Of a stretch of 64,000 nt of DNA, positions 271-57,326 are shown one piece after another. A model generated the notes under the pieces. It was not told the DNA's origin, did not search any database, and saw only the letters and a program-made list of their open reading frames with translations. The DNA lies in the NCBI RefSeq assembly GCF_021869535.1, contig NW_026262723.1, positions 23,002,001 to 23,066,000 of the forward strand, in the 5' to 3' direction. Position 1 is the stretch's first letter, and each line of letters opens with the position of its first letter. The DNA is from Mytilus californianus. Lineage: Eukaryota. The position numbers were made by a program, and so were the translations under genes.

Positions 271-539
271 CTTCACTTTAAGATATGTCTCTACAAATTC
301 TCCGATAGGATTGGAAATTCTAACTACAACATCATGAAAGAAATCATTGTCTACAGGTCCAAGAGAAAATTTGCTTTTAGGGGTGAAGGAATCTTTTCCG
401 TAATACAAAAGCTGCGTATCAAAAGATCCCTGCGGACGAGACCAAAATCTGTATAACAAACCACGTCCTTGTATAGCCTCTTCTCCAGGGTTAAGCCACC
501 CGCTACAACGTATTTCAAACTCCGTTTCTAGTGCGAAAC
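271..539 (-). CDS. Exon, distal REJ module
   Basis: ttttcag|GT..AAG|gtatga, phase 1-0. Peptide (G)[89 protein letters not shown]. Confidence 0.9.
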
Positions 540-685
540 CTGAAAATACATTTAAAGATTCACCGACACTGTTTTATAAGAGACATCACAAGATTTTTCA
601 AAAATGTTAATAAATGTTAGTAATAGGAAATAAAATAAAATGACATATCAAATCATAATTGAAAACAAATTTTTGATATTATTAC

Positions 686-720
<35 letters not shown>

Positions 721-3700
721 CAATTAAGGAATGACTGTAATATTTTTTCTGTCTATGAAGAAATAACATCAAAAATGTGCTGCACACTGAATAACCGGCG
801 TAGCGGGTTATTTTAAAGTGTGCACCACATTTTTTATGTTATTTCGAATAGACAGAAAAAATATTAAAGTCATTTCTTATAATTTAATTTTTAATTCCAT
901 TTTAAACCGGAGTAAATCATGAAAAAACGTTGATGACGTCAAGGTCACATGACAAAATTATGTCTATGTGCTGATAAACAAAACAACGTCAGCCAATCGG
1001 AAGACGCGTTACATCCGAAATTAAATTATATGATAATAAAAATAATAATAACAATAATGATACAAATGATAATAATAATAGTTATACAAATGATAAAAGT
1101 ATTAAATTAAATGATAATACGCAAGTTTTTAATGTTTATTTATACCTGATATTGGATCAATGTTGCAAGTTCCTCCATATGGTGGCAGATTGGTTATAAA
1201 TTCATATTCGGTAAAGCTAGGAGCGTAACCATACACTTTGCCATCTATTCTAAATCGATATATCTCTCCTCCAATGAGGGATCCCTGTTTAATTTTTATC
1301 GCCTGAGAGGATGTCCCTGAAAATAAAAAATAATCATGATCAAACTTGACAATCGATTTGAGAAGAGTTAAGACTTAATTTAAGTAGAGGGGGATTCTAA
1401 ATTAAAAATGATACAATTTCATAATATTTTGCAAAAGTATAGTTAGGTAAATGTACTGTAAATTCTTTTATTAAACAAAATTGTCTGAGTTATCTCCACT
1501 GATTTAAGCATTTAAAAATAAATTGATAAAAAAAATGTCATAATAGTATAAAATCGTAATAAGGTGTTTATTTTGACAAATTCAATTTCTGCAGCAAATT
1601 TGTTTATTTCAGTAATTGTCTACACCGATCATTTGAAAGCGAAGATTAATTTAGACTCTAACTGAAATGAATAGTCTAAAAAATATCAAGAATTCAAAAA
1701 ATTGAAAACAACACGTTTAATAATTTCATGCGTCCGAAGAGCTTTTCTGGATTTACCTTCATCAGGAACGCTCAATGCCAAACATTTGAAATCCGAGGGA
1801 TGTATAAGTATAGAAATAGTTGAAGAGCTATATGACAAAAATACCTAAAACAAATAGCCAAATTCAAATTTCGATAGTAACTGCAAAAATATAAAAGTTT
1901 TGTCAAAACAGAAATCATACTATTGTAAAAATGAATTTGTCTTAAACATGTTAAATAGCTTGCATGATTAAAACAAGTAATTGGATGCAAGGTACTTAAA
2001 ACAACTACAGGTCACAGTTTCATATGTATATATTGTCTATAGGTGTACCTGCTTCGGTCAGACCATCTAGGTTCTTGACAGGATAAAAACCTCCTAAGGT
2101 CTCATTCTTCAGATAAAGGCTCCATTTGTACTCCTCTTTATCGTAGTTAGTACATTCAGCGCACGTGACCGATAAAGTGAATTCACCAGACGGATTCATC
2201 TTTGATTTGCAATTTACATGACAACTGCAAAGTATAAAAAGAATACTAAGAGAATTCCCTGGGAGTTGGATAAAAATTCTTAACATTAAAATGAGTTGTT
2301 TATAGTTTCTATACGTAAAATATTAAACGTTTGGGATAATAAAAAAACAAAAAGGAATAAATAGAACAGCCAAATCCGTCTTATTTCAAGTTTACATTAT
2401 ATTATGCATCTGCAATATGTTTGTGACTATCCTCTTTTGTGAACTTGTAGTCTTGCAGTGTTTGTCTTTATAAATGTTTCATTGTAATTTATTGAACAAA
2501 ACCGTTGATCATTTCTGCAGAACTGCTTTTTCACATTGAATTTTTCTTAAGGATCATATACAGTGAGTAACATCAAGGGGAACGTATTCTGATTATCAAA
2601 GTGTGCATTTTGACAAATAATTTCTATCCAATAATGCTTAATTTTTTATTCATTTAATCCTAAGCAATCACCAAATGGCTAAAAGAATAACCACTTTTAA
2701 ATATTATCCTGTTTACTAAATGAAATTTGTTATTCTGCTATCTTATCAACAATACATATCATAATTATATTGATGCATTGAAACCAAGTAATAAAATAAA
2801 AAAAAAAACTTACTTAATAATAAGCGTTGGTGGATCTCCCTCAACAACATAAACTAACTGTTCAAACGAACCCACTCTGTCATCTTTATACACTTCTACT
2901 TCAAACACATTCTCTGTATTTGGTTCTAAATACAAAGTACTTATTTTTAGTTGTGACTCGTGAAATGGCAGAATGCCAATTCCTGTTCCGAAACAACCAT
3001 CCTGTCTAGACATGTTGACATATATATCCCATTCAGGAATATCAATCTGCGAAATTGTTTCTTCGTATACGTTTGTAGACTGTCGGCATTTCCATATAAA
3101 TCTCATTCCTGTCTTGTTGTTGGGGTCATCAATATCTGGATCAAATGATTGTTCTCCTGCATTCATAACCAGCATTTGATTATAACCAACAACTCTAGCG
3201 TTGCCACCGCTTATTTTAACCTTGAGTGGAGTTGGTATAATTTCTAAGTAGGTGAAGTCTTCAGCTGACAATCCATATATTTCAGTCATTGAAACATTTA
3301 AATTAATTCTGTATTGTCCAGTCGGTAGTATTCTTGGTATGAAAACTAAATTCAAGTTATTCAATTCGACAGAATCGTCTATCTTGTAGTTTTCAAATAT
3401 ATAATCTTGATAGGTTTCTCCTTGGCTAATTTTGTAAATATTCCAAAGATATGAAACCGTCTGGGAAACTTTACAATTAACTTCTGCAGAACTTTCTAGT
3501 GTTATCCTTTGTGATTTTTGGATGACTTCTGGTTCATCAATATCTTGTCCACCTCCGTTTATATGAACAACCGGATAAAAACAACTTATTCCACTTATTA
3601 TGGCCATTGATGATATACTTTTAGATGAAATAAGATTAGAACCTGTGAGTATGACATGATAGGTTGAATTTTTACGATACATATGCGTATGAATAAGACT

Positions 3701-6700
3701 TGACGACGGTTGCCAGTACATGTATTTGTAATTCAATGACGCTGCGATATCTTCACAGTTCTTCTCACCATACAAAACAATTGGTGAATTATCACCCAAG
3801 TCCCATTTATAGCAAGATTCTGTACCAGGTTGACTTAATTGAAGAGTAAAAGTAGTAGTTTCAAATGCATTTGTAGGTCCGTTGTTACTTAATGTAGAAA
3901 TCAGGACAGTCTGGTAAATGGACATATTGAACGTTCTAGTAATGTGCGACAGTTGATTACTGGCGTTTACAACAATTTTAAAATTCCCGCCATTTACAAA
4001 TTGATATGTCAAGGTAGGATTTTCAGTTTCCCTTACAACGTTATTTCCCAAGTCCCACACATATTTAATATAGTTTCCGCTCACGGTTGAGGCATCAAAT
4101 ATTATATCTCGTTCAGTTGGATAAATATTTTCCTCGTCCCCATAACCGAAACTTACGTCAGAGCTGTAATCCGACAAATAAAAGTATTTTGTAATTTTCA
4201 GTCCTGTCACAGCTTCTAACACCCAAACATACGCTTCTGCATACTTTTGAGATACAATATTGCTAGCATGGAATGTTATTTGATATTTTCCTTTTTGAAA
4301 ATAAGTTTGAGTTTTATTTATTTGAAAATTACTAACAAAGTCTCGATTTATATTATCCGAATAAACTGTACCATCTCCTATAGAATAGTTGTATTTTACT
4401 TTACTTCCGCTTTCAATGTTAAACATGAAATCTATAGAATTTCCGGATGGAATGTACGGTGTGGTGTGGTAAATAGATATACCGGAAATCGGTTGTTGTA
4501 GAGAAGTCCATGTGGTAAGTGACATGTGACTTATTTTGTTTAAACAGTTCATATCTATCTTGACTTCCCCAATGAAGCTGGCATTATCATATTTAATGTT
4601 GAACTGTTCCGATTTACCAACTTGCATCTGATTTACGTAAAATATATCCGTAGATATGTTTCCAAACGTAACATTGCATTTCACGTGAGATGGTGGATTT
4701 ATAATTCCATTGTAATCCACTGTTAGAATTATGTCTCCAGGTGGATTAGCAATTACAGGAACTGTAGATAAAATCATATCCTGCACCACATTTTCGACGT
4801 ACACCTGGTCGTTCATGGTAAACGTCTCAGAAGAAATATTATTTGAAGCTTCAACAGACACATTGTATATCCCAACTTCGTTTATTGATATTGTGTGATA
4901 AAATAATGTTATTCCACGTTTCTCATTTCTAATGTATACGGTGTCATAATTTTCATCGTTAACAAATATGTCAAAATTTAAATTTGATCCATTACTAGTC
5001 CGTATGGTAAGAAGCACATCACTGTTTGGTATAACTGCATACGAGTTTGCTGTCACAGTTAGATCATGGACAACTTCATCCACAGTAAAGTTGGCCTCTA
5101 TTATCTGAATACTCACACGATTAGATATATTTACTTTTAAAATGTATGTTCCAACGTCATAATAATGAGAATCCGATACTTGTTGAAATTCTGAAACAAA
5201 CTGGTTTAAGATTTCACCATCACCAAAGTTTATCTGGAGGAGTAAATTACTGTAGCTATATTCTGCAGAAATGATGTCAATCATTAAGTATCCAGAATAC
5301 ACTGGATCAAGCTGTGTTGTGTTCAGAATTAAGCCAGCAACTACTTTCTGTATGATGAGATATGTACTGGTTTGAACATGACTGACGGCATTTGATGTAT
5401 TAACCGTTATAGTAATATTCCCTTCATTCGTATATCTTAAAAACAGAAAGTAGAAAATATAGCATAAATTTTGACTTACTCTTTTGCTCAATCCACCATT
5501 ATCTACATAAGAAAATGCCTGTACCAAGTCAGGAATATGAAAGTTGTTATCCATTCGTTTGATGTGTTTGAGCTTTTGATTTTGCCATTTGATTAGGGAC
5601 TTTCCTTTTGGAATTTTCCTCAGAGTTCTTGTTTTGTGATTTTACTTTTTGCTGTAATTCACTTTAGAGTATTTAGACAAATGACGCATGACCACGATCT
5701 CAGCAACTTTATTTTAGTTCGTGCAACCCAAACCTGTTTATCTCCCATATTTTGTTGTGTATTTACGATAATTTAGCTGTGACTTGAAAACACCATTTTC
5801 ATACGTGTTTAATTCCTTTGTAGAAACAAACACAGTCTTACGTACATGATTTTTTTTTCGTTGTTATTGGCTTTGAACTAGTTGTCAGTAACTGCGAGTA
5901 CTCTCAGATCTGTATTTATAGTCTTTTTGTTGCTGGGATGTATAATTACCTGTCCACGTCCACTCTGTGTTTTTGTTATATGTATTTCTATTTGTATCCA
6001 TCTGATGAATTAAGCCTTTTTCAACTGATTTTTATAGTTTGTTCTTATGTTGTACTGTTACACCACTTTCCCAGGTTAGGGGAAAGGTTGAGCGCTCACA
6101 AACATGTTTAACCCCTCCACATTCTTTACGTGCCTGTCCCAAGTCAGGAGCCTGTAGTTCAGTTGTTGTCGTTGGTTCATGTCTGTCATTTTTGTTTTTC
6201 GTAAATTGTTTTGTTATAAATTAGGCCGTTAGTTTTCTCAATTGAATTGTTTCATATTTTTAATTTCGGGGCCTTTTATAGCCGACCATACGGTATGGGT
6301 TTTTCTCATCGTTGAAGGCCGTACGGTTGCCTATAATTGCTTACATCCACTTCAATTGAACTTTGGTGGATAGTTGTCTCATTGGCAATCATACCACATC
6401 TCCATATTTTTATACAGATTATGGTTTAAGTTGGTCTTATTAATGATTGAATATGTTTTATTTCATGTCAGATGGTTGGAAGTTGTTGTTAGTTTATTCA
6501 TTAAATTTTTAAAGAAATTTGTAAGCCTCAGTTATAGTTGAATCACCTGTCTTTCCAGATAGCATTATGTAGTTACTATCTTAAAGGGGCACTAGCTACG
6601 AGAAAAATAAAAAATCTAAAGTATGATTTTTTTGTTCAATCATTAATGAAAGTGAAATAATGGAATAATAAATAGCTTTTAGCAGCAAGTATGGTTCAAT

Positions 6701-48700: not shown

Positions 48701-51700
48701 GTAGTGTATTCTGATGATGAGGTTGCCTTACTAACCGTTTGTCCAGTATCAACGTATGGGTTTGTTGTTGTAGGCTCTTCTTGTTTCACACTATTTGTAG
48801 AATATTTTAATGTTTCAGAATTTACAGAATGGGTACCTGACGCTGGTTCCGTACTAGATGTGATGTTTTCTAATGGTTCAACTGGCTGCATTTCTGTTGT
48901 ACTGGCTGTGATTCCAACTGTATCTGAAAGAAAATAGTACTATGGTAACAAAAAACATCTATATATTATTTCAAAAATGAAAACTTACAGTATAAAGTCT
49001 TACTTGAACAAAATTAAATATCAAGTATAAATTCGCTTCACAACGAACACTTCAGTATTTGTAATTGTGTACTTAATTCAGTATTATCATGTTATTCTTT
49101 TTTCCTTGGTATCATTGGGAGCACTTTTAAATGGTCGTTAGAAAGAGGTGTTCATAAAACAATAGGTGTATTGTTTTTCTTTAATTGTTTAACATTTCTT
49201 ACCGATATAACATGTTACTTTTATTATTCTTCCCTTAGTTTATTTATTTTGTATTTACATTGTGTCATAGGTCAAATTTATTTGTTCAGTGTATGTTCAA
49301 TGGTGTTAATATGTCCTTTGATTGAGTTAAGCTATTTCAGTTAATATGTTATAGTGTGTCTTTCTATGTTGTGATGTTACACTATTGTTTCAGAAAAAGG
49401 GTGAAGGTTTGGTACCATTAAAACGTTTAAACCCGCTGCATTTGTTTGCACCTGTCCTAAGTCAGGAATCTGATGTTCAGTAGTTGTCGTTTGTTGATGT
49501 GGTTCATGAGTGTTTCTCGTTTCTTGTTTTTTATATAGATTAGACCGTTGGTTTTCCCGTTTGAATGGTTTTACACTAGTAATTTTTTGGGGCCCTTTAT
49601 AGCTTACTGTTTGGTGTGAGCCAAGGCTCCGTGTTGAAGACAGTACTGTGACCTATAGTGGTTTACTTTTAAAAATTTTGACTTGGATGGAGAGTTGTCT
49701 CATTGGCACTCATACCACATCTTCTTATATCTACACTCTCGTAGACATAAAACACATTTCATGTTAAATTCGGTGTGCGCCTTTCAATTAACCACCATCG
49801 TAATATATCTTTCAATTAGCAACATAAATGGTTTGACAATTGCTATACAATGTATAAAAACGATATGAAGGCTAATCATTACAATTGGTTATGTTTTCTT
49901 TTACTGAATAACACTTTTAATGCAAAATCCAAATATGTAAATTTTTAGATTTTCTATGAAGGGTGTAACTGACATTTATCAACGACAGCTTTTATTATTT
50001 CATTTGGGGAAAAATGGTTACTTGTGAGATTTGCCATTATTTATAACATACCAAAAATTATCACTTGATCAGTGTCGATGGTGAAATTAAGTGAATGTGA
50101 TGAATTATGGATAGCTTGTCTCAGCAATTCAGTAATAGTATCTGCTGACTGTGTCGTTGACGAATCATTGGATTTCAGTTGAAGCACAAATAACACTTCT
50201 ATACTCCCTTGCCTGGCAAAAGGAAATACGTAATTATTACATGTTTGTCAAGTTATCGATTCTTTCTTTTATTTACACATTATGAAAATTACAAAATTGC
50301 TGAAACAATTATGAAACGAATAGATCAGGCGTAATCTTTTTTTATAATTTATCATGCGTCATTCCTTAAAAAGAAATAATAAATCAAATTGAAGAAACGT
50401 TTATTTCTTTGTAATTGCGTGCCATGTATTTTTATTTATGTAATAAATCTCTGTTTTGATTATCGATCTCAAGTTATAAGAGAAAAAACCTAAATGAATA
50501 TAAAAAATAATTAGATGAAAGCCATCTTGTTTACTGTCCTTGTCTGTTTGCATCAAGTGGGAAGATTATGCTTTCAACTACGAACTAATATGCAACATGG
50601 GCATATCAGTAATTTGAGAACAATTTGTTTATGCAAAAACCGAAACCCTTTACATTAAACTACAAAGGAGATTTTGATTGTAAAACATAGTGTGACGTCT
50701 TAAATTCAATTTCCTGTAAAGTAAACCGGGAATTAAATCATTTTTTTTGCAACATTAAATATTTATTTAGCTATATTCATTTTTTTTATTTAAACCCTTT
50801 GAAGTCACATAACAATATCATAATAATAATAGTTTATTGAAAGAAGACAACGTAAACAGGATCTGAGATAGAATGAGTTAAGAAATTACGCAGATTACTA
50901 GTACATGTGTGGCTTTAAAATACAAACGTTTTCACTCACTACAAATACAGACAATTAAAAGTTAAGAATATAGATTAAAGATAATACAAAGCAGAATTTA
51001 TCAAGATTCGTTTAATAGTTTAAATTCACTGTTTTATAAAAAAAATAAAAAAAATATAATGTATAAATTCCATGTGAAAAGTCATTACCTTTGTTCATGT
51101 GCAATATACATACAAATATATATATATTTTTTTCAATCTAAAACAACCAACTACTATTTTTTTTTATCATAAGTATATGATATTTTTTCTTCTGATAAGT
51201 CGTCTCTTAATAAAATGTTCTTAATTGTTAATCGGACATGAATTTAGTTAAATTTAAAAGAACGTTGCCGAGAGTTCTGTCCGAGTTTATCTTCACCATG
51301 CCTATGAATAAAAAAATATAATCTTCAAGATTTCAAATTATCGAAAACGAAATATAAATTTTAACAACAATTCTCCTCCCCCATGTAGTAAACCTAATTT
51401 CAACACTTATTGAACAATATGAAATATATTTACACCATAGCGAGTTCAAAACTTATGCAAAATATCATGCGTAAAATTCATTCTTTATAAATATACTCTT
51501 CCAAAAAAAGAAACGCAACAATCAATTTACTAAATTCAAAATATGAATTTTATTATAAAATTGCGTTATTGAGAGATGAAAACAGCCCGCGATAATCGAA
51601 TTCAAATTTCTGATAGTGGCTGTTGATTAAACGTGACCTTTTCGGGTCAGTATGTGTAACGCTGTACGAGAAATACGTACGGTTATGATTGGGAAAGTTG

Positions 51701-54700
51701 CACGTGCGAGTCATACATTATCTTATGCGGTTTCATTTGTATAAAAAACACCTAACCGTTTAAGTGAATTCGTTCGTTAGATTATTTCTCGAACATCGAA
51801 CATCATGCTAGAACGTGTCAAGACTCCTACTACCCGGAATATCGTCATTGGTCATCTCAATGACAGTCAAACACAGAATGCAGCCACTAGAATTTATAAT
51901 GTTCACTGAAGCACGATTTCCAGACTCTTGCAACGGTACCAGCAATCCGGTTCAACGTTCTTGCCGACCTGAGCATCCCAAGATCGGTTTAGCGTCTACT
52001 TTACTGGAGAAACAAAACAATGACAGCAACAAAAACAGCACCAAATGTCCTAGGTCTCCGACAAATATCGGATCAGACAGTCAGAAACCGTCTCCGTGAA
52101 AACGGCCAACGCGCTAGACGTCCTTACATTGACACATTTCTAAGACGCCGGCATCGACTAGCAAGGGCCCGATGATGCAACAGAATAGAGGCTGGGACGT
52201 GCAAAACTTGAGGCGATTCTTGCGATGAATCAAGATTCATGATGTAAAAAAGAAATGACCGTACAAGTGTCTACAGACGCCGGAATGAGAGGTTCGAGAA
52301 CATTTGTGGGATGATTTGGATAAACGCGTGCGCTGTCGTCTTTCAGGAAACTGTAAGAACTACAGCACGTTCTTGAGCAAGAATCGGGAAAATTCCGCAA
52401 GACCGTATTCGTCGATTGATCGAGTCTATGCTGAGACGGGTCAATGCTGTGTTACAGGCAAATGATAGGCACAACAGATATTGACTGTAAAGTGACGTCA
52501 TCTGATTGCTATGGACTTAAATGTGACACATTTGACATTGTATTAAAGAACTTTAAAGTTTGAACGACCAGTGTAGCAAGTTTCAGTGTAAAGACTAAGT
52601 GAAGCTTATTTTTGTTTTCAAAATATGGTTGAAAATTTGAAGTTATTTTTTTACATGTTGCATTTCTTTTTTAGAAAGTGTATATCAGGTACTGCAAAGC
52701 AAAAGTAGGGAAATCCAAAATATCAGAAAGTTTTTATTACCTATGATTAAAACTGGAAATAGGACCACTAAAATCAACATCACCAACCAAAATTGGGTGT
52801 AATTAGGATTACTAAAATCCATATTGACAACTAAAACCGGGTGTAAATAAAACAACTAAAATTAATTTTGCCAACCAAATAAAAAGTAAAATACGACTAT
52901 CAATATCAGTTTTGACTTTGTTTTAGTCAAAGAATCCTTACCATAACCACGTGTGGGTTTCGTCGAAAAACTTCGGGAAAAAAACTTGAATTTGTGAAGA
53001 TTGGACGTTTCAGATGAAAGTGACTTCCAATCTTCTAAAGTATTTCTCTCTGATAAATAGAGCTGCATCTTTTAAACAATGATATACAAGTAATCCCTAA
53101 TGATACAGTCACAGCAACAACAGAGAATACTTAAGCTTAAAATATGCGCTAAGGCATCTGTTTTCACGCAAAATCTCGCGTAATCATTAAATTGCTTTAC
53201 AAAATGTAAGCGTCTCTTATTTTGTCGTTGTCAAAGGAAAATCTTATTAAGGCGTTCAGAAATATTTTAGCGTTGCTATCATTATAAATACAAATTTGAG
53301 ATAGTTTTACATTTTTTTATTCCTAGGTTTACGGTTTCCAAGAAAGATGCAAGTATGAAAAAGGTGAAAGGCGAATATATAAGAAAGATATCCAAATAGT
53401 TATGAGATAGCATGCAGATATAGGTATACATACAGTCACACATCATCAAACCTGAACGACTCGACTATTGCGTACGAGTAGCTGTGTCCGAGCGGCCCAT
53501 TGGTCAAAAAATTATTAAACTGAAACAAAAAAGAAAACATCTTCAATTTTTTTAAAAAACAGCAAGAATTGTGTATACAAAAGAGATATTATCTACGTAA
53601 ATTATATACTAGTGATCTTTTTAAAAAGTGTTGAATTTTCAATAAGTTAATATATAATTTGATACCACTGAAGATTATTTTTGCATTTATTTTATTTTCA
53701 TTTCATAAAATATAATTCTAAAAAGTTAATAATTGTCAAAGCGTAAAAAATAAAACCAAAGTGTATGCAATGGTTCAAATAGAAAGTTCAATATCTACCA
53801 AAAAATGAGATTTCGACATTAATAAATAAATATGACCAAAACAGTCAAGGAAATTTGTGATTGATGTTGTAAGACGTGAAACAGAAACAAATCACTCATA
53901 AAAAATATATTTTATGACATTCTTTGAAACATGCACATAGAGAAAACGAAAAACATCAGACTTTTAAACGCAATCACTTCTTTTAATTCAAAAGGGAATT
54001 AATTTGATTCAGTAATCAGTATTATAAGGCCTGAGTTTCAATCCGAAAGTGTTGTTTAAATACCTCTCAGATAAATAAATCAATTTTTTGAATGTGCATA
54101 TATTATGTTTAATGTAAGACTGGTTGCGATAACCTCCCCACATTTATTTAGAATTTTAAGCCAATATTTCATTTCTTTCACTTCTAACTTATCTTGTTTG
54201 TGAATTATCCTTTGTAATTCCGATTTATTTATTTTGTCCCCCCCTCCTTTGTGGATGCATTTTACCGGTCTATCTTTATACCTAATGCATTTTTATGCAT
54301 ACTAAAAATATCATATAATTATTTCCATTGTTTTTAAACTTTATTTTTGCATGATATCAGTTTTTTTTCTAGCATCCCTTTTTTTTTGGTTGCTTTTATT
54401 CATATGTTATTCGTCTTGATCAATATTGATAGAATTTCAAATAATACAATGATTTATGTGCTGCTTCGGTTTAATATAAGTATTTTCAGAGAGTGGCTTC
54501 TTTTTGTTTATTTTGTTATTTTTTTGTATGTTTCAATCTAGACTGATCATTTGCAACCATCTGCAATCAAATATTAATCTAGAAACCAACATTATTGTTT
54601 GTTGCAACAAAATAAATAATTATGGTAAAATTTAGGAAAAAGTGTCGTTCGGATAAAAAAAGGAATCTCCCTTCAATTGAATTGCCAGGAAACGTGATTA

Positions 54701-57326
54701 ACCCATTATATTAAATGGTAGTTCGAGGTTTATGTCATCCATGTATGAGTTCAAACTCTGATTTAAATGTTCTTTTAATTCGTTTTAAATCTTTATTCTT
54801 TCTTACAATGACAACAAAGTGTGGAAGTCATACTAAAAATCAATTAAACAGCAATTTTCTTGGAAATGAATGTCTCGTATTGATATTTGCTGTACATCCG
54901 GGCTTTTTCTATACTACCGGAAGTAATCAACTTTTATGCATTTATTAAGATTTGTTCTTGAAGAGTAATGTTATGATAAATAAATTCTTCGATTCTCGTC
55001 CCACGGCACTATGACGTTATACAATCTATGACGTATTGTCTATAAAAGCAGCTTAATTCCTACCGTGCATGGATATATGACGTTATTCCCCACTATCTAT
55101 TTATAAATTTATAATTAAGTCAGCCATACTGAGATAAATAAATTCTATGCGACAAGTGTTCCTGTAACTTGATAAAACTTCAATGTTTCGATTAGTATTA
55201 TAAAGGCATAATTAAGTCGCAAAATGCTATTATCAGAAAGTAATTAACGACAAAATTAAACTCGGTAAACCGATCATACTATGAGATATATTTCAAAACC
55301 TGGAGACAAGCTTAAAAATTATAAGGCGGTTTGGCTTTGGAAAAAAATAGATCATTAACTCCATATTTTTCTATAAAACAGTGATAATAGATAAGCGATG
55401 CCAAATTCAATATTTTGATTGATCAGGTACGGTCGAAATCTGAATAATTTCTGAAAAGTGCAAAATACTTAAAAAATGGAAACTTCTAAAAAATAAACAG
55501 GCAATTATTAGAATAAAAAACATGAAAAAAAACCTGAATAGCATTTAAAAAAAGGTTAAGACATCAAATATCCGTACACCAACTTACATAACACGACAAA
55601 GATAACGAAATAGGATATAAAACAGGCAACCGATGGGAATATGGGTGTTTACGGCAGATCTTTGATAGTATACGTTATTTATTCGCCTCGTTTACGATTT
55701 TGAGCTATCGTATATATACACTTTTACTTTACTCGTTTTCTATGCATGTATGTTCGTTTCTGTACGTTTCGTTAATCATTGCTAAAACACTATGTAATTC
55801 TCAATTCAACACGAAATTCCTTTGACAATACACTTTCGCTAATAGTATAGTTTTTAAAAACAGTTTCAACTTTCAGTTTGATCAGCGGTGTTTCTTTTAT
55901 GCCAAAACACCATATGCAGAACGACACCAACAAAACAAAGTAAATATGTATAACGATAATATTTGCAATCTAATTATAAATCGATATAATTAACTGACTA
56001 TGTAAATATGTTAGCGACAAAAAATAGCCATTCATCATGAAACAGAACAATTCATCTGTCGGATCATTTTAATTTGATTATGAAATTTCTGATGTCATAT
56101 AATTATATTGAATCTTTTTGATAATCAGAACAACCTTTGAAACACGTTTTCCATTCCCCAAGGGTATTAACACAAAAAAAGTCAATATAGCAAAATTAGG
56201 AGATTCGGTTTGATTGTAAATGAGACAACTATCCACCAGAGACCAAATGACGTGAATGTAAGCATCTACAGGTCATCGTAAGACCTTCAATTTATAGTAT
56301 ATTACAAAATTGCCGCAACGCAATTAAGATTTGTCACGTCACCATAGAGTAATGATGACGTGAAAAGAACAGAATCTTTTGCCATTATTTAAGAATGAAA
56401 ATAAGTTCAGATCCTGGCAAACCGCAAAGGGTTGCAAACAGTTTTAAATAAGTAAAAGGACAGATAAAGATACCGATTTGTCAAATCAAAGTGATTGTTA
56501 TCTGAATTTTTGTATAATATCCAATATTACAATGACGGCACGGGTGCCTTAAACTGGATGCCTTAAAACATATGAAATAATATCCGATTGGATACAAAAG
56601 AGGCGGACGGAGCCCAGGGGACTTTTAAAACTCTAAAGCGGAACAAAAACTAACAACACAATGGCGAAAAACGACGAAAAGACAAACAAATCTACAACAC
56701 ACTATATAGAAACTTAAGCCTGAGCAACATATAACATGTTTTGTGTGACAATCATCATCCGATGCACTCGAAAATTTTGCAGTACAAAAAAAATTAACAT
56801 TGAAGAGCATAAAAACCAGATCAAAAACCAGATCCGAAGTCTACAAGCTTCCAATTTTTGGTAAAAATATACAATAAAAATCACATAAATACTACGTGTG
56901 ATGATTAAATCAAATTTATACGTACCATTTCAAGTACCTCTGCTTCGAGTTGTACAAAGGCGTCTGATGTGACATTCAAAAGATCATTGTGCCATTCTAT
57001 ACCCTGTATGATTTTCAAGCTTCCTCTGTGTCCTGGACTAATGGTCGTCTCTGCCTGTCGTTTTCTGCGCTTATGAAGATGGTGGTACTCCTTTTCTGGG
57101 ACGTCATATTCTGTTTCGTAACCGTTTGGAATTTTCACATTCTGTACAAATTCATAAATAACATTTTCCCATCCTGTTTTGGATGTTCGGAAGTCATTTG
57201 AATATTTACTGTCGTTGTAATCAATTGTATTGTCAATTTCTAGAGAGTTGTGATTTTTTGAAAGCTTTATCAATTCTGTTTCTCTTGATGACTTCTCTTG
57301 AGATTCATTTTCTGCTTTGTTACCAT
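271..57326 (-). CDS. Multi-exon gene, open at the 3' end and uncertain at the 5' end: giant polycystin-1/REJ-family-like protein with SEA-mucin-SEA-EGFx11-SEA-EGF-PKD-REJ ectodomain (about 8,000 aa in window)
   Basis: 28 exons read by eye with GT-AG boundaries. Phases join in frame throughout, except one missing phase 0-to-2 exon inside SEA1. Domains were recognised by motif: SEA G-S-I-x-V, cbEGF D-I/V-N/D-E-C, PKD FGDG/WDLGD, REJ N-x-PP-x-GG-x-C. Confidence 0.9.
680..722. repeat. (AAT)n microsatellite (a second degenerate tract at about 1030-1080)
   Basis: taataataatactaataataataataataata. Confidence 0.85.
725..1030 (+). mobile_element. Foldback/MITE-like element: about 75-bp imperfect palindrome (725-879) plus tail
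   Basis: Arms taaggaatgactgtaatattttttctgtctat... / ...atagacagaaaaaatattaaagtcatttctta. Second copy inverted at 19744-20041. Confidence 0.8.
1146..1316 (-). CDS. Exon, REJ module (not in ORF track)
   Basis: ttttcag|GG..TCAG|gtataa, phase 1-1. Peptide (G)[56 protein letters not shown](G). Confidence 0.9.
1690..1870 (-). mobile_element. Retrozyme-like repeat fragment
   Basis: Similar to the copies at 58810-59340. Contains a hammerhead-like motif at 1730-1771. Confidence 0.6.
1730..1771 (-). ncRNA. Type I minimal hammerhead-ribozyme-like motif (atypical stem II)
   Basis: GCGTTC-CTGATGA-AGGTAAATCCA-GAAA-AGCTCT-TC-GGACGC. Stem I GCGUUC/GGACGC pairs, and the CUGAUGA and GAAA core elements are intact. 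Confidence 0.55.
2049..2224 (-). CDS. Exon, REJ module
   Basis: tttgcag|T..GCAG|gtacac, phase 2-1. Peptide (N)[37 protein letters not shown]...LTEA. Confidence 0.9.
2814..5435 (-). CDS. 2.6-kb exon: several PKD repeats and start of REJ module
   Basis: tttttaag|A..ATTAA|gtaagt, phase 2-2, 874 codons. PKD-type motifs INFGDG, YSIGDG, WDLGNN, WDLGDN, then [10 protein letters not shown]... to GDPPTLII. Confidence 0.92.
5510..5650 (+). repeat. Interspersed repeat (aaatgcctgtaccaagtcaggaatatg...ccattcgtttg family)
   Basis: Related copies at about 14390-14550 and 17465-17630. Confidence 0.75.
5835..6415 (+). mobile_element. 3' non-coding tail of a Penelope-like retroelement
   Basis: Reverse-complement match to 23793-24400, which lies directly downstream of the RT remnant at 24547-25015. 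Confidence 0.75.
6585..7275. mobile_element. 691-bp non-autonomous DNA transposon with TTAA TSD (Kolobok-like termini AG...CT)
   Basis: TTAA|AGGGGCACTAG ... CTAGTGCCCCT|TTAA. Confidence 0.8.
7430..7872 (+). mobile_element. Helentron-type non-autonomous element (HINE/DINE-like) with 159-bp internal repeats and a (GGAC)n microsatellite
   Basis: 5' TGTCCCCCGC is complementary to 3' GCGGGGGACA. There is a 3' hairpin, and repeat units start at 7469 and 7628. Confidence 0.75.
7928..8138 (-). CDS. Exon, first PKD domain
   Basis: atttcag|TA..CATCA|gtaaga, phase 1-2. Peptide ...[27 protein letters not shown]...WTFSH(Q), which joins [12 protein letters not shown] of the next exon. Confidence 0.9.
8768..8914 (-). 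CDS. Exon, calcium-binding EGF after SEA3
   Basis: Phase 1-1, donor gtaaga. Peptide (D)[48 protein letters not shown]. Confidence 0.92.
8941..9420 (-). mobile_element. Partial copy of the Penelope-like 3' tail
   Basis: Matches 23970-24490 in the same orientation. Confidence 0.7.
10254..10470 (-). mobile_element. Retrozyme-like repeat fragment
   Basis: Contains a hammerhead motif at 10282-10325. Degenerate pieces of the same family lie at about 19585-19640 and 44270-44340. Confidence 0.65.
10282..10325 (-). ncRNA. Type I minimal hammerhead ribozyme, mutated core
   Basis: GCGTCA-CTGATGG-GTCT(TATGT)AGAC-GAAA-CGCACG-TC-TGGCGT. Stems I and II pair and the triplet is GUC, but core A9 is G. Confidence 0.65.
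10713..10920 (-). CDS. Exon, SEA3 C-terminal part
   Basis: cacacag|CTA..CAGG|gtatgc, phase 0-1. Peptide [32 protein letters not shown]... Confidence 0.88.
11179..11306 (-). CDS. Exon, SEA3 N-terminal part (not in ORF track)
   Basis: ttcgtag|AT..TCC|gtaagt, phase 1-0. Peptide (D)[42 protein letters not shown]. Confidence 0.88.
11480..11948. mobile_element. MITE copy 1 (469 bp including TA flanks)
   Basis: TA|GGTGTAATACCACCA ... TGGTGGTATTACACC|TA. Confidence 0.88.
12847..13315. mobile_element. MITE copy 2, same length and orientation as copy 1 and apparently identical
   Basis: Same TIRs and TA flanks. No difference found by eye. Confidence 0.88.
14632..14751 (-). CDS. EGF exon 11 (cbEGF)
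   Basis: (D)[39 protein letters not shown], phase 1-1, donor gtatgt. Confidence 0.92.
   Translation of the reverse strand, partial: TLTNVRRALVHCTLTVPTQRETIGVDVMMDSIKRMISLV
15237..16152 (+). mobile_element. Helentron-type element with three 167-bp tandem units and a nested MITE
   Basis: 5' TGTCTCGC / 3' GCGAGACA, 3' hairpin CTGCGAC..GTTGCAG, units starting at 15322, 15489, 15656 and 15823. Confidence 0.75.
15829..15996. mobile_element. 168-bp MITE with TA TSD, nested in the element above
   Basis: TA|CACCTTATCGCTATT ... AATAGCAATAAGGTG|TA. Confidence 0.8.
16188..16304 (-). CDS. EGF exon 10 (cbEGF)
   Basis: (D)[38 protein letters not shown], phase 1-1. Confidence 0.92.
16628..16744 (-). CDS. 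EGF exon 9 (cbEGF)
   Basis: (D)[38 protein letters not shown], phase 1-1. Confidence 0.92.
16988..17104 (-). CDS. EGF exon 8 (cbEGF)
   Basis: (D)[38 protein letters not shown], phase 1-1, donor gtgagt. Confidence 0.92.
18108..18224 (-). CDS. EGF exon 7 (cbEGF)
   Basis: (D)[38 protein letters not shown], phase 1-1. Confidence 0.92.
18888..19004 (-). CDS. EGF exon 6 (cbEGF)
   Basis: (D)[38 protein letters not shown], phase 1-1, donor gtaagt. Confidence 0.92.
19241..19360 (-). CDS. EGF exon 5 (cbEGF)
   Basis: (D)[39 protein letters not shown], phase 1-1. Confidence 0.92.
19744..20041 (-). mobile_element. Second copy of the foldback element at 725-1030
   Basis: Tail and palindrome (19888-20041) in reverse orientation. 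Confidence 0.8.
20294..20410 (-). CDS. EGF exon 4 (cbEGF)
   Basis: (D)[38 protein letters not shown], phase 1-1. Confidence 0.92.
20876..20998 (-). CDS. EGF exon 3 (cbEGF)
   Basis: (D)[40 protein letters not shown], phase 1-1. Confidence 0.92.
21748..21864 (-). CDS. EGF exon 2 (cbEGF)
   Basis: (D)[38 protein letters not shown], phase 1-1. Confidence 0.92.
22496..22609 (-). CDS. EGF exon 1 (lacks the calcium-binding consensus)
   Basis: (I)[37 protein letters not shown], phase 1-1, donor gtaaga. Confidence 0.9.
23793..25015 (-). mobile_element. 5'-truncated Penelope-like retroelement: RT C-terminal remnant (about 24547-25015) plus 3' tail
   Basis: Frameshifted peptides [17 protein letters not shown]..[64 protein letters not shown]. 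Confidence 0.78.
25073..25138 (-). CDS. Short Thr/Pro linker exon
   Basis: ttttataag|AA..TACA|gtaagt, 66 nt, phase 1-1. Peptide (E)[21 protein letters not shown]. Confidence 0.75.
26002..26147 (-). CDS. Exon, SEA2 C-terminal part
   Basis: tttatag|A..ATAG|gtaaga, phase 2-1. Peptide (E)[30 protein letters not shown]...TSFI. Confidence 0.9.
26759..26826 (-). CDS. Exon, SEA2 middle part
   Basis: gtttcag|CTA..TTCGA|gtaagt, 68 nt, phase 0-2. Peptide [22 protein letters not shown]. Confidence 0.88.
27063..34588 (-). CDS. 7,526-nt exon: Ser/Thr/Glu-rich mucin ending in SEA2 N-terminal part
   Basis: ttttcag|AT..CAATTT|gtaagt, phase 1-0, open throughout (extends ORF 27045..34169). Ends [33 protein letters not shown]. 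Confidence 0.92.
28798..29651. repeat. Intra-exon direct duplication: 28798-29051 and 29398-29651 (254 bp, offset 600)
   Basis: 4 mismatches by eye. Peptide [16 protein letters not shown]...PDTSKTTSA occurs twice. Confidence 0.92.
35189..36400 (-). CDS. Mucin exon, 1,212 nt (3' boundary uncertain)
   Basis: actttcag|ACACCACT acceptor. The first phase-1-compatible donor before the in-frame stop is T|gtaggc (weak). Ser/Thr-rich. Confidence 0.65.
36893..37306 (-). mobile_element. 5'-truncated retroelement end, second family
   Basis: Decayed [16 protein letters not shown]..[12 protein letters not shown] peptide plus tail. Shorter tail copies at about 13360, 21365-21510, 56590-56730 and 59970-60120. 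Confidence 0.7.
39088..44124 (-). CDS. 5,037-nt mucin exon with hierarchical tandem repeats
   Basis: ttttgcag|TT..CAAG|gtattg, phase 1-1, 1,679 codons, open throughout. Confidence 0.92.
39421..40356 (-). repeat. Coding minisatellite, 13 x 72 bp ([24 protein letters not shown])
   Basis: Units start every 72 bp from 39421 to 40285 and are near-identical. Confidence 0.95.
40357..41620 (-). repeat. Coding 252-bp higher-order repeat (7 x 36-bp monomers)
   Basis: Landmark gacgtc(a/t)tacctg recurs at 40611, 40863, 41115 and 41367. Confidence 0.85.
44715..48923 (-). CDS. 4,209-nt mucin exon (Ser/Thr/Pro/Gln/Asp-rich)
   Basis: ctttcag|AT..ACAG|gtatgc, phase 1-1, 1,403 codons. Confidence 0.92.
45131..45325 (-). 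repeat. Coding minisatellite, 5 x 39 bp ([13 protein letters not shown])
   Basis: Units at 45131, 45170, 45209, 45248 and 45287. Confidence 0.92.
46700..47720 (-). repeat. Degenerate coding repeat of about 36 bp (xTRDQTTSxDx)
   Basis: Recurrent tgttgtttgatctcttgtgg, translating as TRDQTT. Confidence 0.8.
49195..49735 (+). mobile_element. Retroelement 3'-tail repeat, related subfamily
   Basis: Near-identical to 63690-64000, with shared motifs to the 5835-6415 family. Confidence 0.7.
50052..50212 (-). CDS. Exon, SEA1 C-terminal part (not in ORF track)
   Basis: tttgccag|G..TTTG|gtatgt, phase 2-1. Peptide [53 protein letters not shown]. Confidence 0.88.
51496..52680 (+). mobile_element. Decayed, internally deleted Tc1-family transposon
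   Basis: TA flanks and 25-bp TIRs matching 21/25. Broken HTH peptide [25 protein letters not shown] and C-terminal [40 protein letters not shown]. Confidence 0.88.
56926..57326 (-). CDS. Exon: pro-segment, KRRKR furin-type site, SEA1 N-terminal part
   Basis: ttttcag|AT..ATG|gtacgt, phase 1-0. Peptide ...[54 protein letters not shown]. Confidence 0.88.

What the first reader, a model, noticed from the sequence alone, without database searches (positions are those of the whole stretch)
271..57326. Giant mucin-SEA-EGF ectodomain fused to a PKD/REJ (polycystin-1-type) core
Seen: one in-frame chain of about 8,000 aa, in the order furin site, SEA, about 5,900 aa Ser/Thr mucin, SEA, 11 EGF, SEA, EGF, PKD repeats, REJ. 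Established: SEA+PTS+EGF defines membrane-tethered mucins, and PKD+REJ defines polycystin-1 family receptors. Some family members carry S/T-rich stretches (C. elegans LOV-1, PKD1L3), but I do not recall one with three SEA domains and a multi-thousand-residue mucin. Inference: a channel-coupled or signalling mucin whose glycosylated stalk could extend well beyond the normal glycocalyx, acting as a flow, contact or gamete sensor.
Basis: partly seen in the sequence, partly recalled or inferred. Interest (0 to 1): 0.8.

Follow-up and report, generated by a model that had tools for sequence, protein, structure and literature searches.

The report
Giant mucin-tipped polycystin-1-like receptor gene
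This is a real, very large mollusc gene that puts a roughly 5,900-residue sugar-coated "mucin" stalk, three SEA modules and twelve EGF modules in front of a polycystin-1-type (PKD/REJ) receptor core. The same layout is already present, unnamed and unstudied, in database gene models of abalone and other molluscs.

Summary
On the minus strand, 28 exons with canonical AG/GT sites and compatible phases splice into a stop-free 7,923-aa chain. Their order is: KRRKR motif, SEA1, about 5,860 aa of Cys-free Ser/Thr-rich mucin in four giant exons, SEA2, 11 EGF, SEA3, EGF12, at least 4 PKD repeats, REJ. The gene is open at both ends of the window.

There are three caveats:
- The third mucin exon cannot be joined in frame from the donor at its ORF end; an internal donor is needed.
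- No signal-peptide exon was found.
- The one RNA-seq run I could lay showed zero reads on the tested exons, so there is no junction evidence either way.

The single-gene reading rests on comparison. A relative's contig (about 62% aa identity) has the same exons in the same order on one strand. They run from a ≥3,222-aa T/S-rich ORF ending in half a SEA domain, through GPS (HL/T), PLAT and the PKD channel. Only the predicted exons align at DNA level.

RefSeq models from Haliotis rufescens (6,593 aa, about 3,200 aa mucin), H. asinina and Gigantopelta share the architecture. So it is a new member of a catalogued but undescribed molluscan polycystin-1 subfamily, not a new kind. The sensor function is inference.

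The parts
56926..57326 (-). Exon SEA1a: acidic/polar N-terminal stretch, KRRKR furin-type motif (57072-57058), first third of SEA1 from about 57021. It enters in phase 1, so at least one upstream exon is missing.
   Evidence: Spliced SEA1 matches the H. asinina SEA at 3e-8 by blastp.
53452..53519 (-). Candidate 68-nt middle exon of SEA1 (SEA1b).
   Evidence: Best-scoring phase-compatible exon in the intron. It has the same length as SEA2b and resembles the equivalent part of SEA3. Inferred, not verified.
50052..50212 (-). Exon SEA1c, with G-S-I-E-V at 50208-50194.
   Evidence: Pfam SEA profile positions 57-106, E 0.0075 and 0.022, sub-threshold. Splice sites.
44715..48923 (-). Mucin exon 1 (1,403 codons; T 24%, S 19%, P 6%, Cys 0), with 33-nt and 39-nt coding tandem arrays.
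39139..44124 (-). Mucin exon 2 (1,662 codons), with 36/72/252-nt coding tandem arrays. An alternative phase-1 donor lies about 50 nt downstream.
35435..36400 (-). Mucin exon 3, 3' boundary unresolved. The ORF runs to 35146, but that donor is out of phase. Phase-1 donors lie at 36071, 35435 and 35336.
27063..34588 (-). Mucin exon 4 (2,509 codons, essentially non-repetitive). Its last ~30 codons (from 27155) encode the first third of SEA2.
   Evidence: Pfam SEA profile 9-35, E 0.0038. The exon end is conserved in the relative.
26759..26826 (-). SEA2b, the 68-nt middle exon of SEA2.
   Evidence: Top candidate. Homologous exon in the relative at L007:4582-4671.
26002..26147 (-). SEA2c, with G-S-I-I-V at 26143-26129.
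   Evidence: Spliced SEA2 matches the Pfam-verified SEA of H. asinina at 2e-21 and of Gigantopelta at 6e-18.
14632..22609 (-). Eleven single-exon EGF modules, all phase 1-1. EGF1 is 22609-22496 (non-calcium type). EGF2-11 are cbEGF: 21864-21748, 20998-20876, 20410-20294, 19360-19241, 19004-18888, 18224-18108, 17104-16988, 16744-16628, 16304-16188, 14751-14632.
   Evidence: Pfam EGF_CA passes its cut-off on EGF2, 10 and 11. EGF1 gives only sub-threshold EGF-type hits. Sequence pattern, tblastn with orthologues, splice sites, exon-only DNA conservation.
11179..11306 (-). SEA3a.
   Evidence: Pfam SEA profile 12-37, E 0.02. Splice sites.
10713..10929 (-). SEA3b, with G-S-I-I-V at 10857-10843.
   Evidence: Spliced SEA3 matches Argopecten P0004:325-445 (Pfam SEA) at 2e-12, and the same position in five other orthologues. 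60% aa identity in the relative.
8768..8914 (-). EGF12 (cbEGF with a longer C-terminal loop).
   Evidence: Pfam EGF_CA 4.5e-9. Adjacent to PKD1 in the orthologues.
7928..8138 (-). First half of PKD repeat 1. The intron splits the repeat, and its second half (the H-x-Y ... G-N-I-T-I-T-V motif) starts the next exon.
   Evidence: Pfam PKD profile 8-46..
2814..5435 (-). Large exon (874 codons): the rest of PKD1, three further PKD repeats, and the start of REJ (from about 3487).
   Evidence: Pfam PKD 8.8e-28 and REJ 1.1e-36. 33-38% identity to mollusc polycystin-1-like proteins over its whole length.
271..2224 (-). Three further REJ exons (2224-2049, 1316-1146, 539-271). The gene then leaves the window.
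   Evidence: Pfam REJ profile 254-412..

Best explanation
The stretch is most of one minus-strand gene of a bivalve, probably a Mytilus mussel. It encodes a member of the polycystin-1 / receptor-for-egg-jelly family with an unusually elaborate N-terminal ectodomain. From the outside in, the order is: KRRKR motif, SEA1, about 5,900 aa of Cys-free Ser/Thr-rich (presumably O-glycosylated) mucin, SEA2, a rod of 11 EGF modules (10 calcium-binding), SEA3, EGF12, at least 4 PKD repeats, REJ. By homology, beyond the window come GAIN/GPS, TM1, PLAT, ten more TM helices and a polycystin channel-like end, for a total of roughly 9,800 aa.

Shown here: the exons, their phases, the domains, and their conservation.

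Inferred mechanism: the glycosylated stalk would be about 1.5 um long at about 0.25 nm per residue (my estimate from general mucin knowledge). It would act as a drag or contact handle. The three SEA modules carry G-S-I-[IE]-V at the position of the MUC1 G|SVVV self-cleavage site, and the GPS carries HL|T in the relative and in the orthologues. All four are non-covalent joints that can part under force. Loss of the N-terminal fragment would expose the GPS stalk as a tethered agonist and activate the 11-TM core, probably with a PKD2-like partner. This is how polycystin-1 and adhesion GPCRs are thought to work.
For: Coding and splicing:
- Giant ORFs far above background.
- All 28 exons have AG/GT sites and compatible phases, giving a stop-free 7,923-aa product.
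- Tandem-repeat periods in the mucin are all multiples of 3.

The critical links are structurally forced:
- SEA2 begins inside the last mucin exon and ends two exons later.
- PKD repeat 1 is split between the exon that follows EGF12 and the large PKD/REJ exon.

Comparison with orthologues:
- They align colinearly with adjacent residues across EGF12, PKD1 and the large exon.
- Pfam on them shows EGF_CA x8-11, SEA, PKD, REJ, GPS, PLAT, Polycystin_dom and PKD_channel in one protein.
- Three gastropod models include 1,300-3,200 aa of mucin.

The relative's contig:
- It has a ≥3,222-aa T/S-rich ORF ending at the same SEA2a exon boundary, followed by every downstream exon through the PKD channel. 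All lie on one strand across about 67 kb.
- Its GPS reads C-L-C-N-H-L/T-S-F-G.
- DNA similarity between the window and the relative is confined to predicted exons.

Basis for the mechanism:
- SEA domains self-cleave and need force to separate (PMC10556640).
- The polycystin-1 stalk acts as a tethered agonist, and N-terminal cleavage raises channel Ca permeability (PMC9171645, PMC11458180, PMC12513491).
- The LOV-1 N-terminal fragment separates at the GPS (PMC9829181).
Against: - There is no transcript evidence. RNA run X19 (about 1.55 Gb read) had zero depth on exons 7928-8138, 10713-10929 and 11179-11306, and 0.02 in the bin holding 8768-8914. Only interspersed repeats were covered. No indexed RNA run holds the large exon or MUC4.
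- MUC3 cannot be joined in frame from its ORF-end donor.
- No start codon or signal-peptide exon was found in 57.3-64 kb.
- GPS, PLAT and the TM/channel part are outside the window and are known only from relatives.
- Some orthologous models (H. cracherodii, Argopecten, Potamilus) start at the EGF array without mucin, so mucin-less isoforms or lineages are possible.
- Proline is low for a classical PTS (1.6-6%).
- O-glycosylation, SEA cleavage and all signalling steps are untested.
Confidence: 0.8

Rival explanations
1. One locus but several transcription units or isoforms. An internal promoter upstream of EGF1 gives the main EGF-SEA-PKD/REJ receptor, and the mucin exons are cassette or alternative 5' exons used rarely or only in one tissue. 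The full ~8,000-aa chain would then be a minor product, or never made in full.
For: The H. cracherodii, Argopecten and Potamilus models begin at the EGF array, although H. cracherodii is >=90% identical to the mucin-bearing H. rufescens model. All the mucin exons are phase 1-1, so they can be skipped freely. The MUC3 boundary is ambiguous. No RNA data are available.
Against: SEA2 is split between the mucin exon and the downstream exons, so skipping the last mucin exon would leave a truncated SEA. The arrangement, including this boundary, is conserved in the relative. Three independent gastropod models include the mucin. The short models may simply be truncated predictions.
Confidence: 0.12
2. 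Two separate adjacent genes: a secreted or tethered mucin (SEA1-mucin-SEA2) and a downstream EGF-SEA-PKD/REJ receptor. They would look like one chain only because the phases happen to match.
For: The link SEA2c (26002) to EGF1 (22609) is not forced by a split domain, and no junction read was obtained. SEA plus PTS is the hallmark of the tethered mucins.
Against: Between 27063 and 22609 I noted no stop-terminated last exon or TM exon on reading the frames (there was no dedicated scan). The signal-peptide scan covered only 57.3-64 kb. The same order and strand occur in the relative and in the single gene models of Haliotis rufescens, H. asinina and Gigantopelta.
Confidence: 0.05
3. A decaying or silent locus: part of the mucin region (MUC3) is already frame-broken and the gene is not expressed.
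For: There is a frame incompatibility at the MUC3 ORF end, and T/S-rich coding potential continues in another frame. RNA depth is zero in the one run laid.
Against: 23.7 kb of stop-free coding sequence survives in a 31-39% GC region. Exon-only conservation against the relative indicates purifying selection. One RNA sample of unknown tissue, 6% of it read, cannot show silence.
Confidence: 0.03

Closest known systems
Molluscan RefSeq/GenBank models: Haliotis rufescens XP_048238653.1 (uncharacterized, 6,593 aa), H. asinina 'polycystin-1-like' (4,628 aa), Gigantopelta aegis LOC121378529 (4,774 aa), Argopecten irradians XP_069125477.1 'polycystin-1-like protein 2', H. cracherodii XP_071106159.1 'polycystin family receptor for egg jelly-like', Mya arenaria 'AGRE1-like'
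   Same: The order of modules is the same: S/T-rich mucin, SEA, an EGF_CA array (11 in H. rufescens), a SEA-like module, EGF, PKD x4, REJ. These continue into GPS, PLAT, Polycystin_dom and PKD_channel. Identity over PKD/REJ is 33-38%. The EGF12-PKD1 junction is at the same residue.
   Different: The window's mucin is about twice the longest of these (5,856 aa against about 3,200 aa). The window has a SEA on both sides of the mucin, whereas Pfam sees one N-terminal SEA in H. asinina and two SEA stretches (best at residues 454-527) in Gigantopelta. All of these are automatic predictions without a published description.
Polycystin-1 family proper: human PKD1, PKD1L1-3, PKDREJ; sea urchin suREJ/SpREJ1-10; C. 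elegans LOV-1
   Same: It shares PKD repeats plus the REJ module. In relatives it also shares GPS with HL/T, PLAT and an 11-TM core with a channel-like end. The family is known for modular, lineage-specific ectodomains: C-type lectin, SUEL, one EGF in SpREJ1, and a 76%-Ser region in SpREJ9 (PMC1934368). LOV-1 is cleaved at the GPS and sheds its N-terminal fragment (PMC9829181).
   Different: No described member has SEA modules, a cbEGF array or a multi-thousand-residue mucin. LRR, WSC, C-type lectin and LDL-A modules were not seen here.
Membrane-tethered mucins (MUC1, MUC3/12/13/17, MUC16)
   Same: It shares a PTS domain with coding tandem repeats, SEA modules with a G-S-[VI]-V-V-type motif, and EGF modules next to a SEA.
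   Different: The anchor is not a single-pass TM with a short tail. The chain continues into PKD/REJ and, by homology, an 11-TM polycystin core. It has eleven fibrillin/Notch-type cbEGF modules instead of one or two EGF. It is not a member of this family.
Adhesion GPCRs with EGF, mucin-like stalk or SEA modules (ADGRE/EMR-CD97; ADGRG6/GPR126 and ADGRF with SEA plus GAIN)
   Same: The logic is the same: adhesive or rod-like modules, an S/T-rich stalk, then self-cleaving SEA and GAIN/GPS joints ahead of the membrane core. GPR126 has a SEA with a furin site (PMC6954182). The Mya model was even auto-named 'AGRE1-like'.
   Different: In the orthologues and the relative the membrane core is 11-TM with PLAT and a PKD channel, not a class B2 7-TM.

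Membership tests
Polycystin-1 / REJ family | Ig-like PKD repeats | tested here: met
   Pfam PF00801, E 8.8e-28, three stretches in 2813-5641, plus a split fourth repeat at 7928-8138 and 5435 onward.
Polycystin-1 / REJ family | REJ module | tested here: met
   Pfam PF02010, E 1.1e-36 (profile 3-209) in the large exon. Profile positions 254-412 are covered by exons 1316-1146 and 539-271.
Polycystin-1 / REJ family | GAIN/GPS with the HL|T self-cleavage site | not testable with these tools
   The window ends inside REJ. In the relative's contig the colinear downstream exon reads C-L-C-N-H-L-T-S-F-G. Pfam finds GPS in the Argopecten and Haliotis orthologues.
Polycystin-1 / REJ family | PLAT domain and 11-TM core with a polycystin channel-like end | not testable with these tools
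   These lie outside the window. They are present downstream in the relative's contig: Polycystin_dom and PKD_channel at L010:12069-14960, colinear with Argopecten residues up to 3288 of 3362. They are also present in the orthologues.
SEA domain (PF01390) | Sequence match to the SEA family | tested here: met
   Direct Pfam on single exons is sub-threshold but correctly placed (E 0.0038-0.023). Spliced modules could not be sent to Pfam because they have no reference. In the sandbox, blastp of the spliced modules gave: SEA2 against the Pfam-verified SEA of H. asinina (66 bits in Pfam) 2e-21 and of Gigantopelta 6e-18; SEA1 3e-8; SEA3 against the Argopecten SEA region 2e-12.
SEA domain (PF01390) | G|S-V-V-V-type self-cleavage motif, and actual cleavage | tested here: inconclusive
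   The motifs G-S-I-E-V, G-S-I-I-V and G-S-I-I-V are present at the expected position in all three modules. Cleavage itself needs an experiment.
Membrane-tethered mucins | Long Ser/Thr-rich, Cys-free PTS domain with tandem repeats | tested here: met
   5,856 aa, S+T 37-43%, Cys 0, with coding-period arrays of 33-252 nt. Proline is only 1.6-6%.
Membrane-tethered mucins | SEA followed directly by a single TM helix and a short cytoplasmic tail | tested here: not met
   Each SEA is followed by mucin, EGF or PKD exons. On reading the frames I noted no TM exon between them (there was no dedicated scan). The chain runs on into PKD/REJ.
Calcium-binding EGF arrays | D-x-[DN]-E-C start, six Cys, aromatic after Cys4; one module per phase-1 exon | tested here: met
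   Pfam EGF_CA passes its cut-off on EGF2, 10, 11 and 12. The same pattern is read in EGF3-9. EGF1 is a non-calcium type that reaches no Pfam cut-off.
Adhesion GPCR (ADGRE-like) | Class B2 seven-TM core after the GAIN domain | tested here: not met
   The orthologues and the relative carry PLAT, Polycystin_dom and PKD_channel after the GPS, that is a polycystin core. This was not tested on the window itself.

The most novel reading that the evidence does not exclude
Molluscs possess a conserved subclass of polycystin-1 receptors built as a serial 'mechanical fuse' sensor. A micrometre-long glycosylated tether is coupled through three self-cleaving SEA joints, a rigid cbEGF rod and a GPS joint to a polycystin channel core. 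It would be used on gill or larval cilia, or on sperm, to sense flow, particle contact or egg coats. The fast-evolving mucin would tune range or species specificity.
Probability: 0.15. Interest if true: 0.7.

Novelty: new member of a known kind. Interest (0 to 1): 0.42.

Why it matters
How polycystin-1 family proteins are activated is still debated: by flow, by ligands, or by loss of the N-terminal fragment. A natural version carries an extreme drag handle plus four predicted force-sensitive joints, and it is conserved across gastropods and bivalves. It would be a useful comparative model for the mechanical-activation and tethered-agonist idea, and a candidate for ciliary or gamete sensing in molluscs. 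In practice, it shows that automatic annotation tends to truncate or mislabel these genes ('uncharacterized', 'AGRE1-like', 'serine-rich adhesin'). The subfamily is therefore invisible in the literature although it is present in the databases.

Tried and rejected
Runs were X19 (RNA), X1/X2 (possibly RNA) and X17 (DNA). Exon depth was zero and only interspersed repeats were covered, at 95-99% identity, so this is uninformative. Only one read-laying run was allowed, so the mucin-SEA2-EGF1 and MUC2-MUC3-MUC4 junctions could not be tested.
- Two run searches, with the large exon and with MUC4, found no RNA holder.
- Pfam on single SEA exons stayed sub-threshold. Spliced peptides were not sent to Pfam, PDB or AlphaFold because they have no reference and I did not type sequences.
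- A scan of 57.3-64 kb for an ATG plus signal-peptide exon with a phase-1 donor gave nothing credible.
- The MUC3 donor at the ORF end (35146) was rejected as out of phase. A frame-switched continuation (35190-35040) could not be joined either.
- A first candidate for SEA1b at 55.8-55.97 kb was rejected on phase.
- A 1,225-aa ORF upstream of EGF12 in the relative (L001:2599-6276) was considered as a mucin exon. It was rejected as an intronic satellite: a perfect repeat with H/W/Y/L content.
- The word-index protein search with the large exon found no protein of the window's own species, only unnamed relatives at <=62% identity.
- Three literature searches found no description of a mucin- or SEA-bearing polycystin in molluscs.
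- The scan's notes held nothing on this locus.
Full report
WHAT IS THERE

The window is AT-rich eukaryotic DNA (GC 0.29-0.43). Its minus strand carries stop-free frames of 1,414, 1,718, 428 and 2,523 codons between 27 and 49 kb, each with T 18-23% and S 14-18%. The longest stop-free frame that contains no predicted exon is 108 aa on the plus strand and 106 on the gene's strand. The largest mucin frame (27048-34616) has no tandem array. These frames are therefore neither chance nor satellite ORFs.

Downstream on the same strand lie short Cys-rich frames with the D-x-[DN]-E-C pattern of calcium-binding EGF. After them comes a 943-codon frame at 2813-5641.

Pfam results:
- REJ (E 1.1e-36) and PKD (E 8.8e-28, three stretches) in the 943-codon frame.
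- More REJ in 1132-1374 and 268-573.
- EGF_CA above its cut-off in each EGF_CA-type exon scanned (EGF2, 10, 11, 12).
- EGF1 is a non-calcium EGF that reaches no Pfam cut-off.

GENE MODEL

All EGF exons and all mucin exons are phase 1-1.

SEA3 is encoded by 11306-11179 plus 10929-10713. SEA1 and SEA2 each need a 68-nt middle exon, which an exhaustive phase-constrained scan placed at 53519-53452 and 26826-26759. The latter is confirmed by homology in a relative.

The first third of SEA2 is encoded at the very end of the last mucin exon. PKD repeat 1 is split between 8138-7928 and the large exon starting at 5435, which restores the canonical H-x-Y ... G-x-[YI]-x-[VI]-x-V motif. So two of the links between 'mucin-type' and 'polycystin-type' parts are forced by domain integrity.

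Concatenating the 28 exons gives 23,769 nt and 7,923 aa with no stop. Of this, 5,856 aa is Cys-free mucin with S+T 37-43%. Its tandem arrays have periods of 33, 36, 39, 72 and 252 nt, all multiples of three.

SEA MODULES

Single exons give only sub-threshold but correctly positioned Pfam SEA matches (E 0.004-0.02). The spliced modules, compared in the sandbox, match SEA domains that Pfam does verify in orthologues:
- SEA2 against H. asinina residues 84-199 (Pfam SEA 66 bits): 2e-21.
- SEA2 against Gigantopelta 443-563: 6e-18.
- SEA1 against the H. asinina SEA: 3e-8.
- SEA3 against Argopecten 325-445: 2e-12, and against the positionally equivalent segment of five other orthologues.

All three carry G-S-I-[IE]-V where MUC1 has its G|SVVV self-cleavage site. 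It is a motif only.

CAVEATS ON THE OBSERVATION

- The donor at the end of the third mucin ORF (35146) leaves two bases, and the next acceptor needs one. In-frame splicing requires an internal donor at 36071, 35435 or 35336. T/S-rich coding potential continues in another frame past the stop. This exon is either shorter than its ORF, carries an indel, or is partly decayed.
- The first exon in the window enters in phase 1 and has no signal peptide. No credible first exon was found up to 64 kb.
- The gene leaves the window inside REJ.

IS IT ONE GENE? TRANSCRIPT EVIDENCE

Only one read-laying run was allowed. The RNA run of the same study as the genome reads (X19, about 1.55 Gb read, 6% of the run) had zero depth on the PKD1, SEA3b and SEA3a exons. 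It had 0.02 in the bin holding EGF12. It covered only interspersed repeats, at 95-99% identity and with 93% of reads running off into unlike sequence.

No indexed RNA run holds the large exon or the last mucin exon. The gene is thus not visibly expressed in that sample. This neither supports nor refutes the fusion.

IS IT ONE GENE? COMPARATIVE EVIDENCE

An exhaustive HMMER search with the large exon found mollusc proteins at 33-39% identity, named:
- Argopecten 'polycystin-1-like protein 2' (3,362 aa)
- Haliotis cracherodii 'polycystin family receptor for egg jelly-like' (3,121 aa)
- its >=90%-identical cluster mate, H. rufescens XP_048238653.1 (6,593 aa)
- Potamilus and Mya models.

Pfam shows EGF_CA x8-11, a SEA, PKD x4, REJ, GPS, PLAT, Polycystin_dom and PKD_channel in single proteins. 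H. rufescens has about 3,200 aa of S/T-rich, Cys-free sequence in front of exactly 11 EGF_CA stretches.

A length-aware search added H. asinina 'polycystin-1-like' (4,628 aa: SEA at 94-169, mucin to about 1,300, then EGFs). It also added Gigantopelta aegis LOC121378529 (4,774 aa, same plan). These orthologues align colinearly to the window, with adjacent residues across EGF12, PKD1 and the large exon.

I then walked a contig of a closer relative (ENA ERZ21930238 ctg26340l, about 62% aa identity in the large exon) in seven steps. On one strand over about 67 kb it carries, in order:
- a ≥3,222-aa ORF with T 33% and S 12%, ending in the SEA2a sequence at the same exon boundary
- SEA2b and SEA2c
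- EGF exons colinear with EGF1-10 of the window (tblastn) and two further EGF_CA gene calls; an EGF11 counterpart was not aligned separately
- SEA3a/b, EGF12, PKD1, the large exon and REJ2-4
- exons colinear with Argopecten residues 1,642-3,288, including GPS (C-L-C-N-H-L/T-S-F-G), PLAT, Polycystin_dom and PKD_channel.

At DNA level the window and this contig align only at predicted exons, plus one intronic repeat. That is the signature of purifying selection on exactly these exons. The mucin proper does not align at all, as expected for a PTS region kept for composition only.

A cautionary control: a 1,225-aa ORF in an intron of the relative is a perfect satellite, not an exon. The window's mucin exons differ from it. 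They are largely non-repetitive, S/T-rich and bounded by in-phase splice sites.

MECHANISM (INFERENCE)

By homology the product is an N-out polycystin-1-type receptor of roughly 9,800 aa. If the mucin is O-glycosylated, and taking about 0.25 nm per residue (my estimate from general knowledge of mucins), it would extend about 1.5 um.

The established elements are these:
- SEA domains self-cleave, stay non-covalently associated and separate under force (PMC10556640).
- Polycystin-1 is cleaved at the GPS. Its stalk acts as a tethered agonist, and removal of the N-terminal fragment increases the Ca permeability of the PC1/PC2 complex (PMC9171645, PMC11458180, PMC12513491).
- The C. elegans LOV-1 N-terminal fragment parts from the membrane fragment (PMC9829181).

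The most likely mode of action is therefore a force or contact sensor. Drag on the mucin would be transmitted through the SEA joints, the cbEGF rod and the PKD repeats to the GAIN/GPS joint. Shedding would then activate the 11-TM core. The tissue (gill or larval cilia, sperm), the ligand and the partner channel are unknown.

COMPARISON AND NOVELTY

It is a member of the polycystin-1/REJ family. PKD and REJ were tested and met. GPS, PLAT and channel were met only in relatives.

It is not a tethered mucin (no single-pass anchor after SEA) and not an adhesion GPCR (polycystin core in relatives), although it works like a hybrid of both. Described family members have lectin, SUEL, single EGF or Ser-rich segments (PMC1934368), but no SEA, cbEGF array or giant mucin. 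Three literature searches found no description of such a protein.

However, the architecture is already in the public protein databases for at least three gastropods, and in shorter form for three bivalves. What is particular to this locus is size (about 5,900 aa of mucin, about twice that of H. rufescens) and a SEA module on both sides of the mucin.

Notes by other agents of this scan name the genome as a Mytilus mussel. I did not test that. The 31-39% GC of this region and the set of related organisms sharing k-mers are compatible with it.

VERDICT

It is a new member of a catalogued but unstudied molluscan polycystin-1 subfamily. Confidence that it is one gene is 0.8. Interest is moderate (0.42). 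Direct transcript evidence is still missing.

Noticed in passing
window 11480-11948 and 12847-13315: There is an exact (100%, 469 nt) direct duplication 1,367 nt apart, inside the intron between EGF11 and SEA3a. It is either a very recent tandem duplication or an assembly artefact.
   Followed up: partly
window 5441-5660; copies at 17471-17629 (87%) and 10054-10113 (78%, opposite strand): An interspersed repeat sits in several introns of the gene. It extends the large exon's stop-free frame upstream by about 70 spurious codons. RNA reads from elsewhere in the genome (95-99% identity, fixed differences) pile up on it and on other intronic repeats at 6.2-6.4 kb and 9.8-10.4 kb.
   Followed up: partly
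L001:2599-6276 (relative contig, intron between SEA3b and EGF12): A 3.7-kb perfect satellite gives a 1,225-aa stop-free ORF that a gene caller reported as a gene. It is a reminder that long ORFs in these genomes can be repeat artefacts.
   Followed up: yes
window 27063-34588 versus 2813-5641: A DNA run of a related organism (X18, organism C) holds 53% of the sampled 31-mers of the PKD/REJ exon but only 27% of those of the last mucin exon. This suggests much faster divergence of the mucin region between close relatives.
   Followed up: no
window 35040-35200: After the stop that ends the third mucin ORF, T/S-rich coding potential continues in another frame for about 50 codons, up to a GT. This could be an indel (real or from assembly) or a decaying exon end.
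   Followed up: partly
window 27232-48934, + strand: Many V/S/L-rich plus-strand ORFs of 80-290 aa lie inside the mucin exons. They are antisense mirror images of the T/S-rich repeats, not genes.
   Followed up: no
same genome, about 51 Mb beyond the window (scan note s1-312233): Another reader noted a polycystin gene with a tandemly amplified exon/intron junction. It may be a paralogue. I did not examine it.
   Followed up: no
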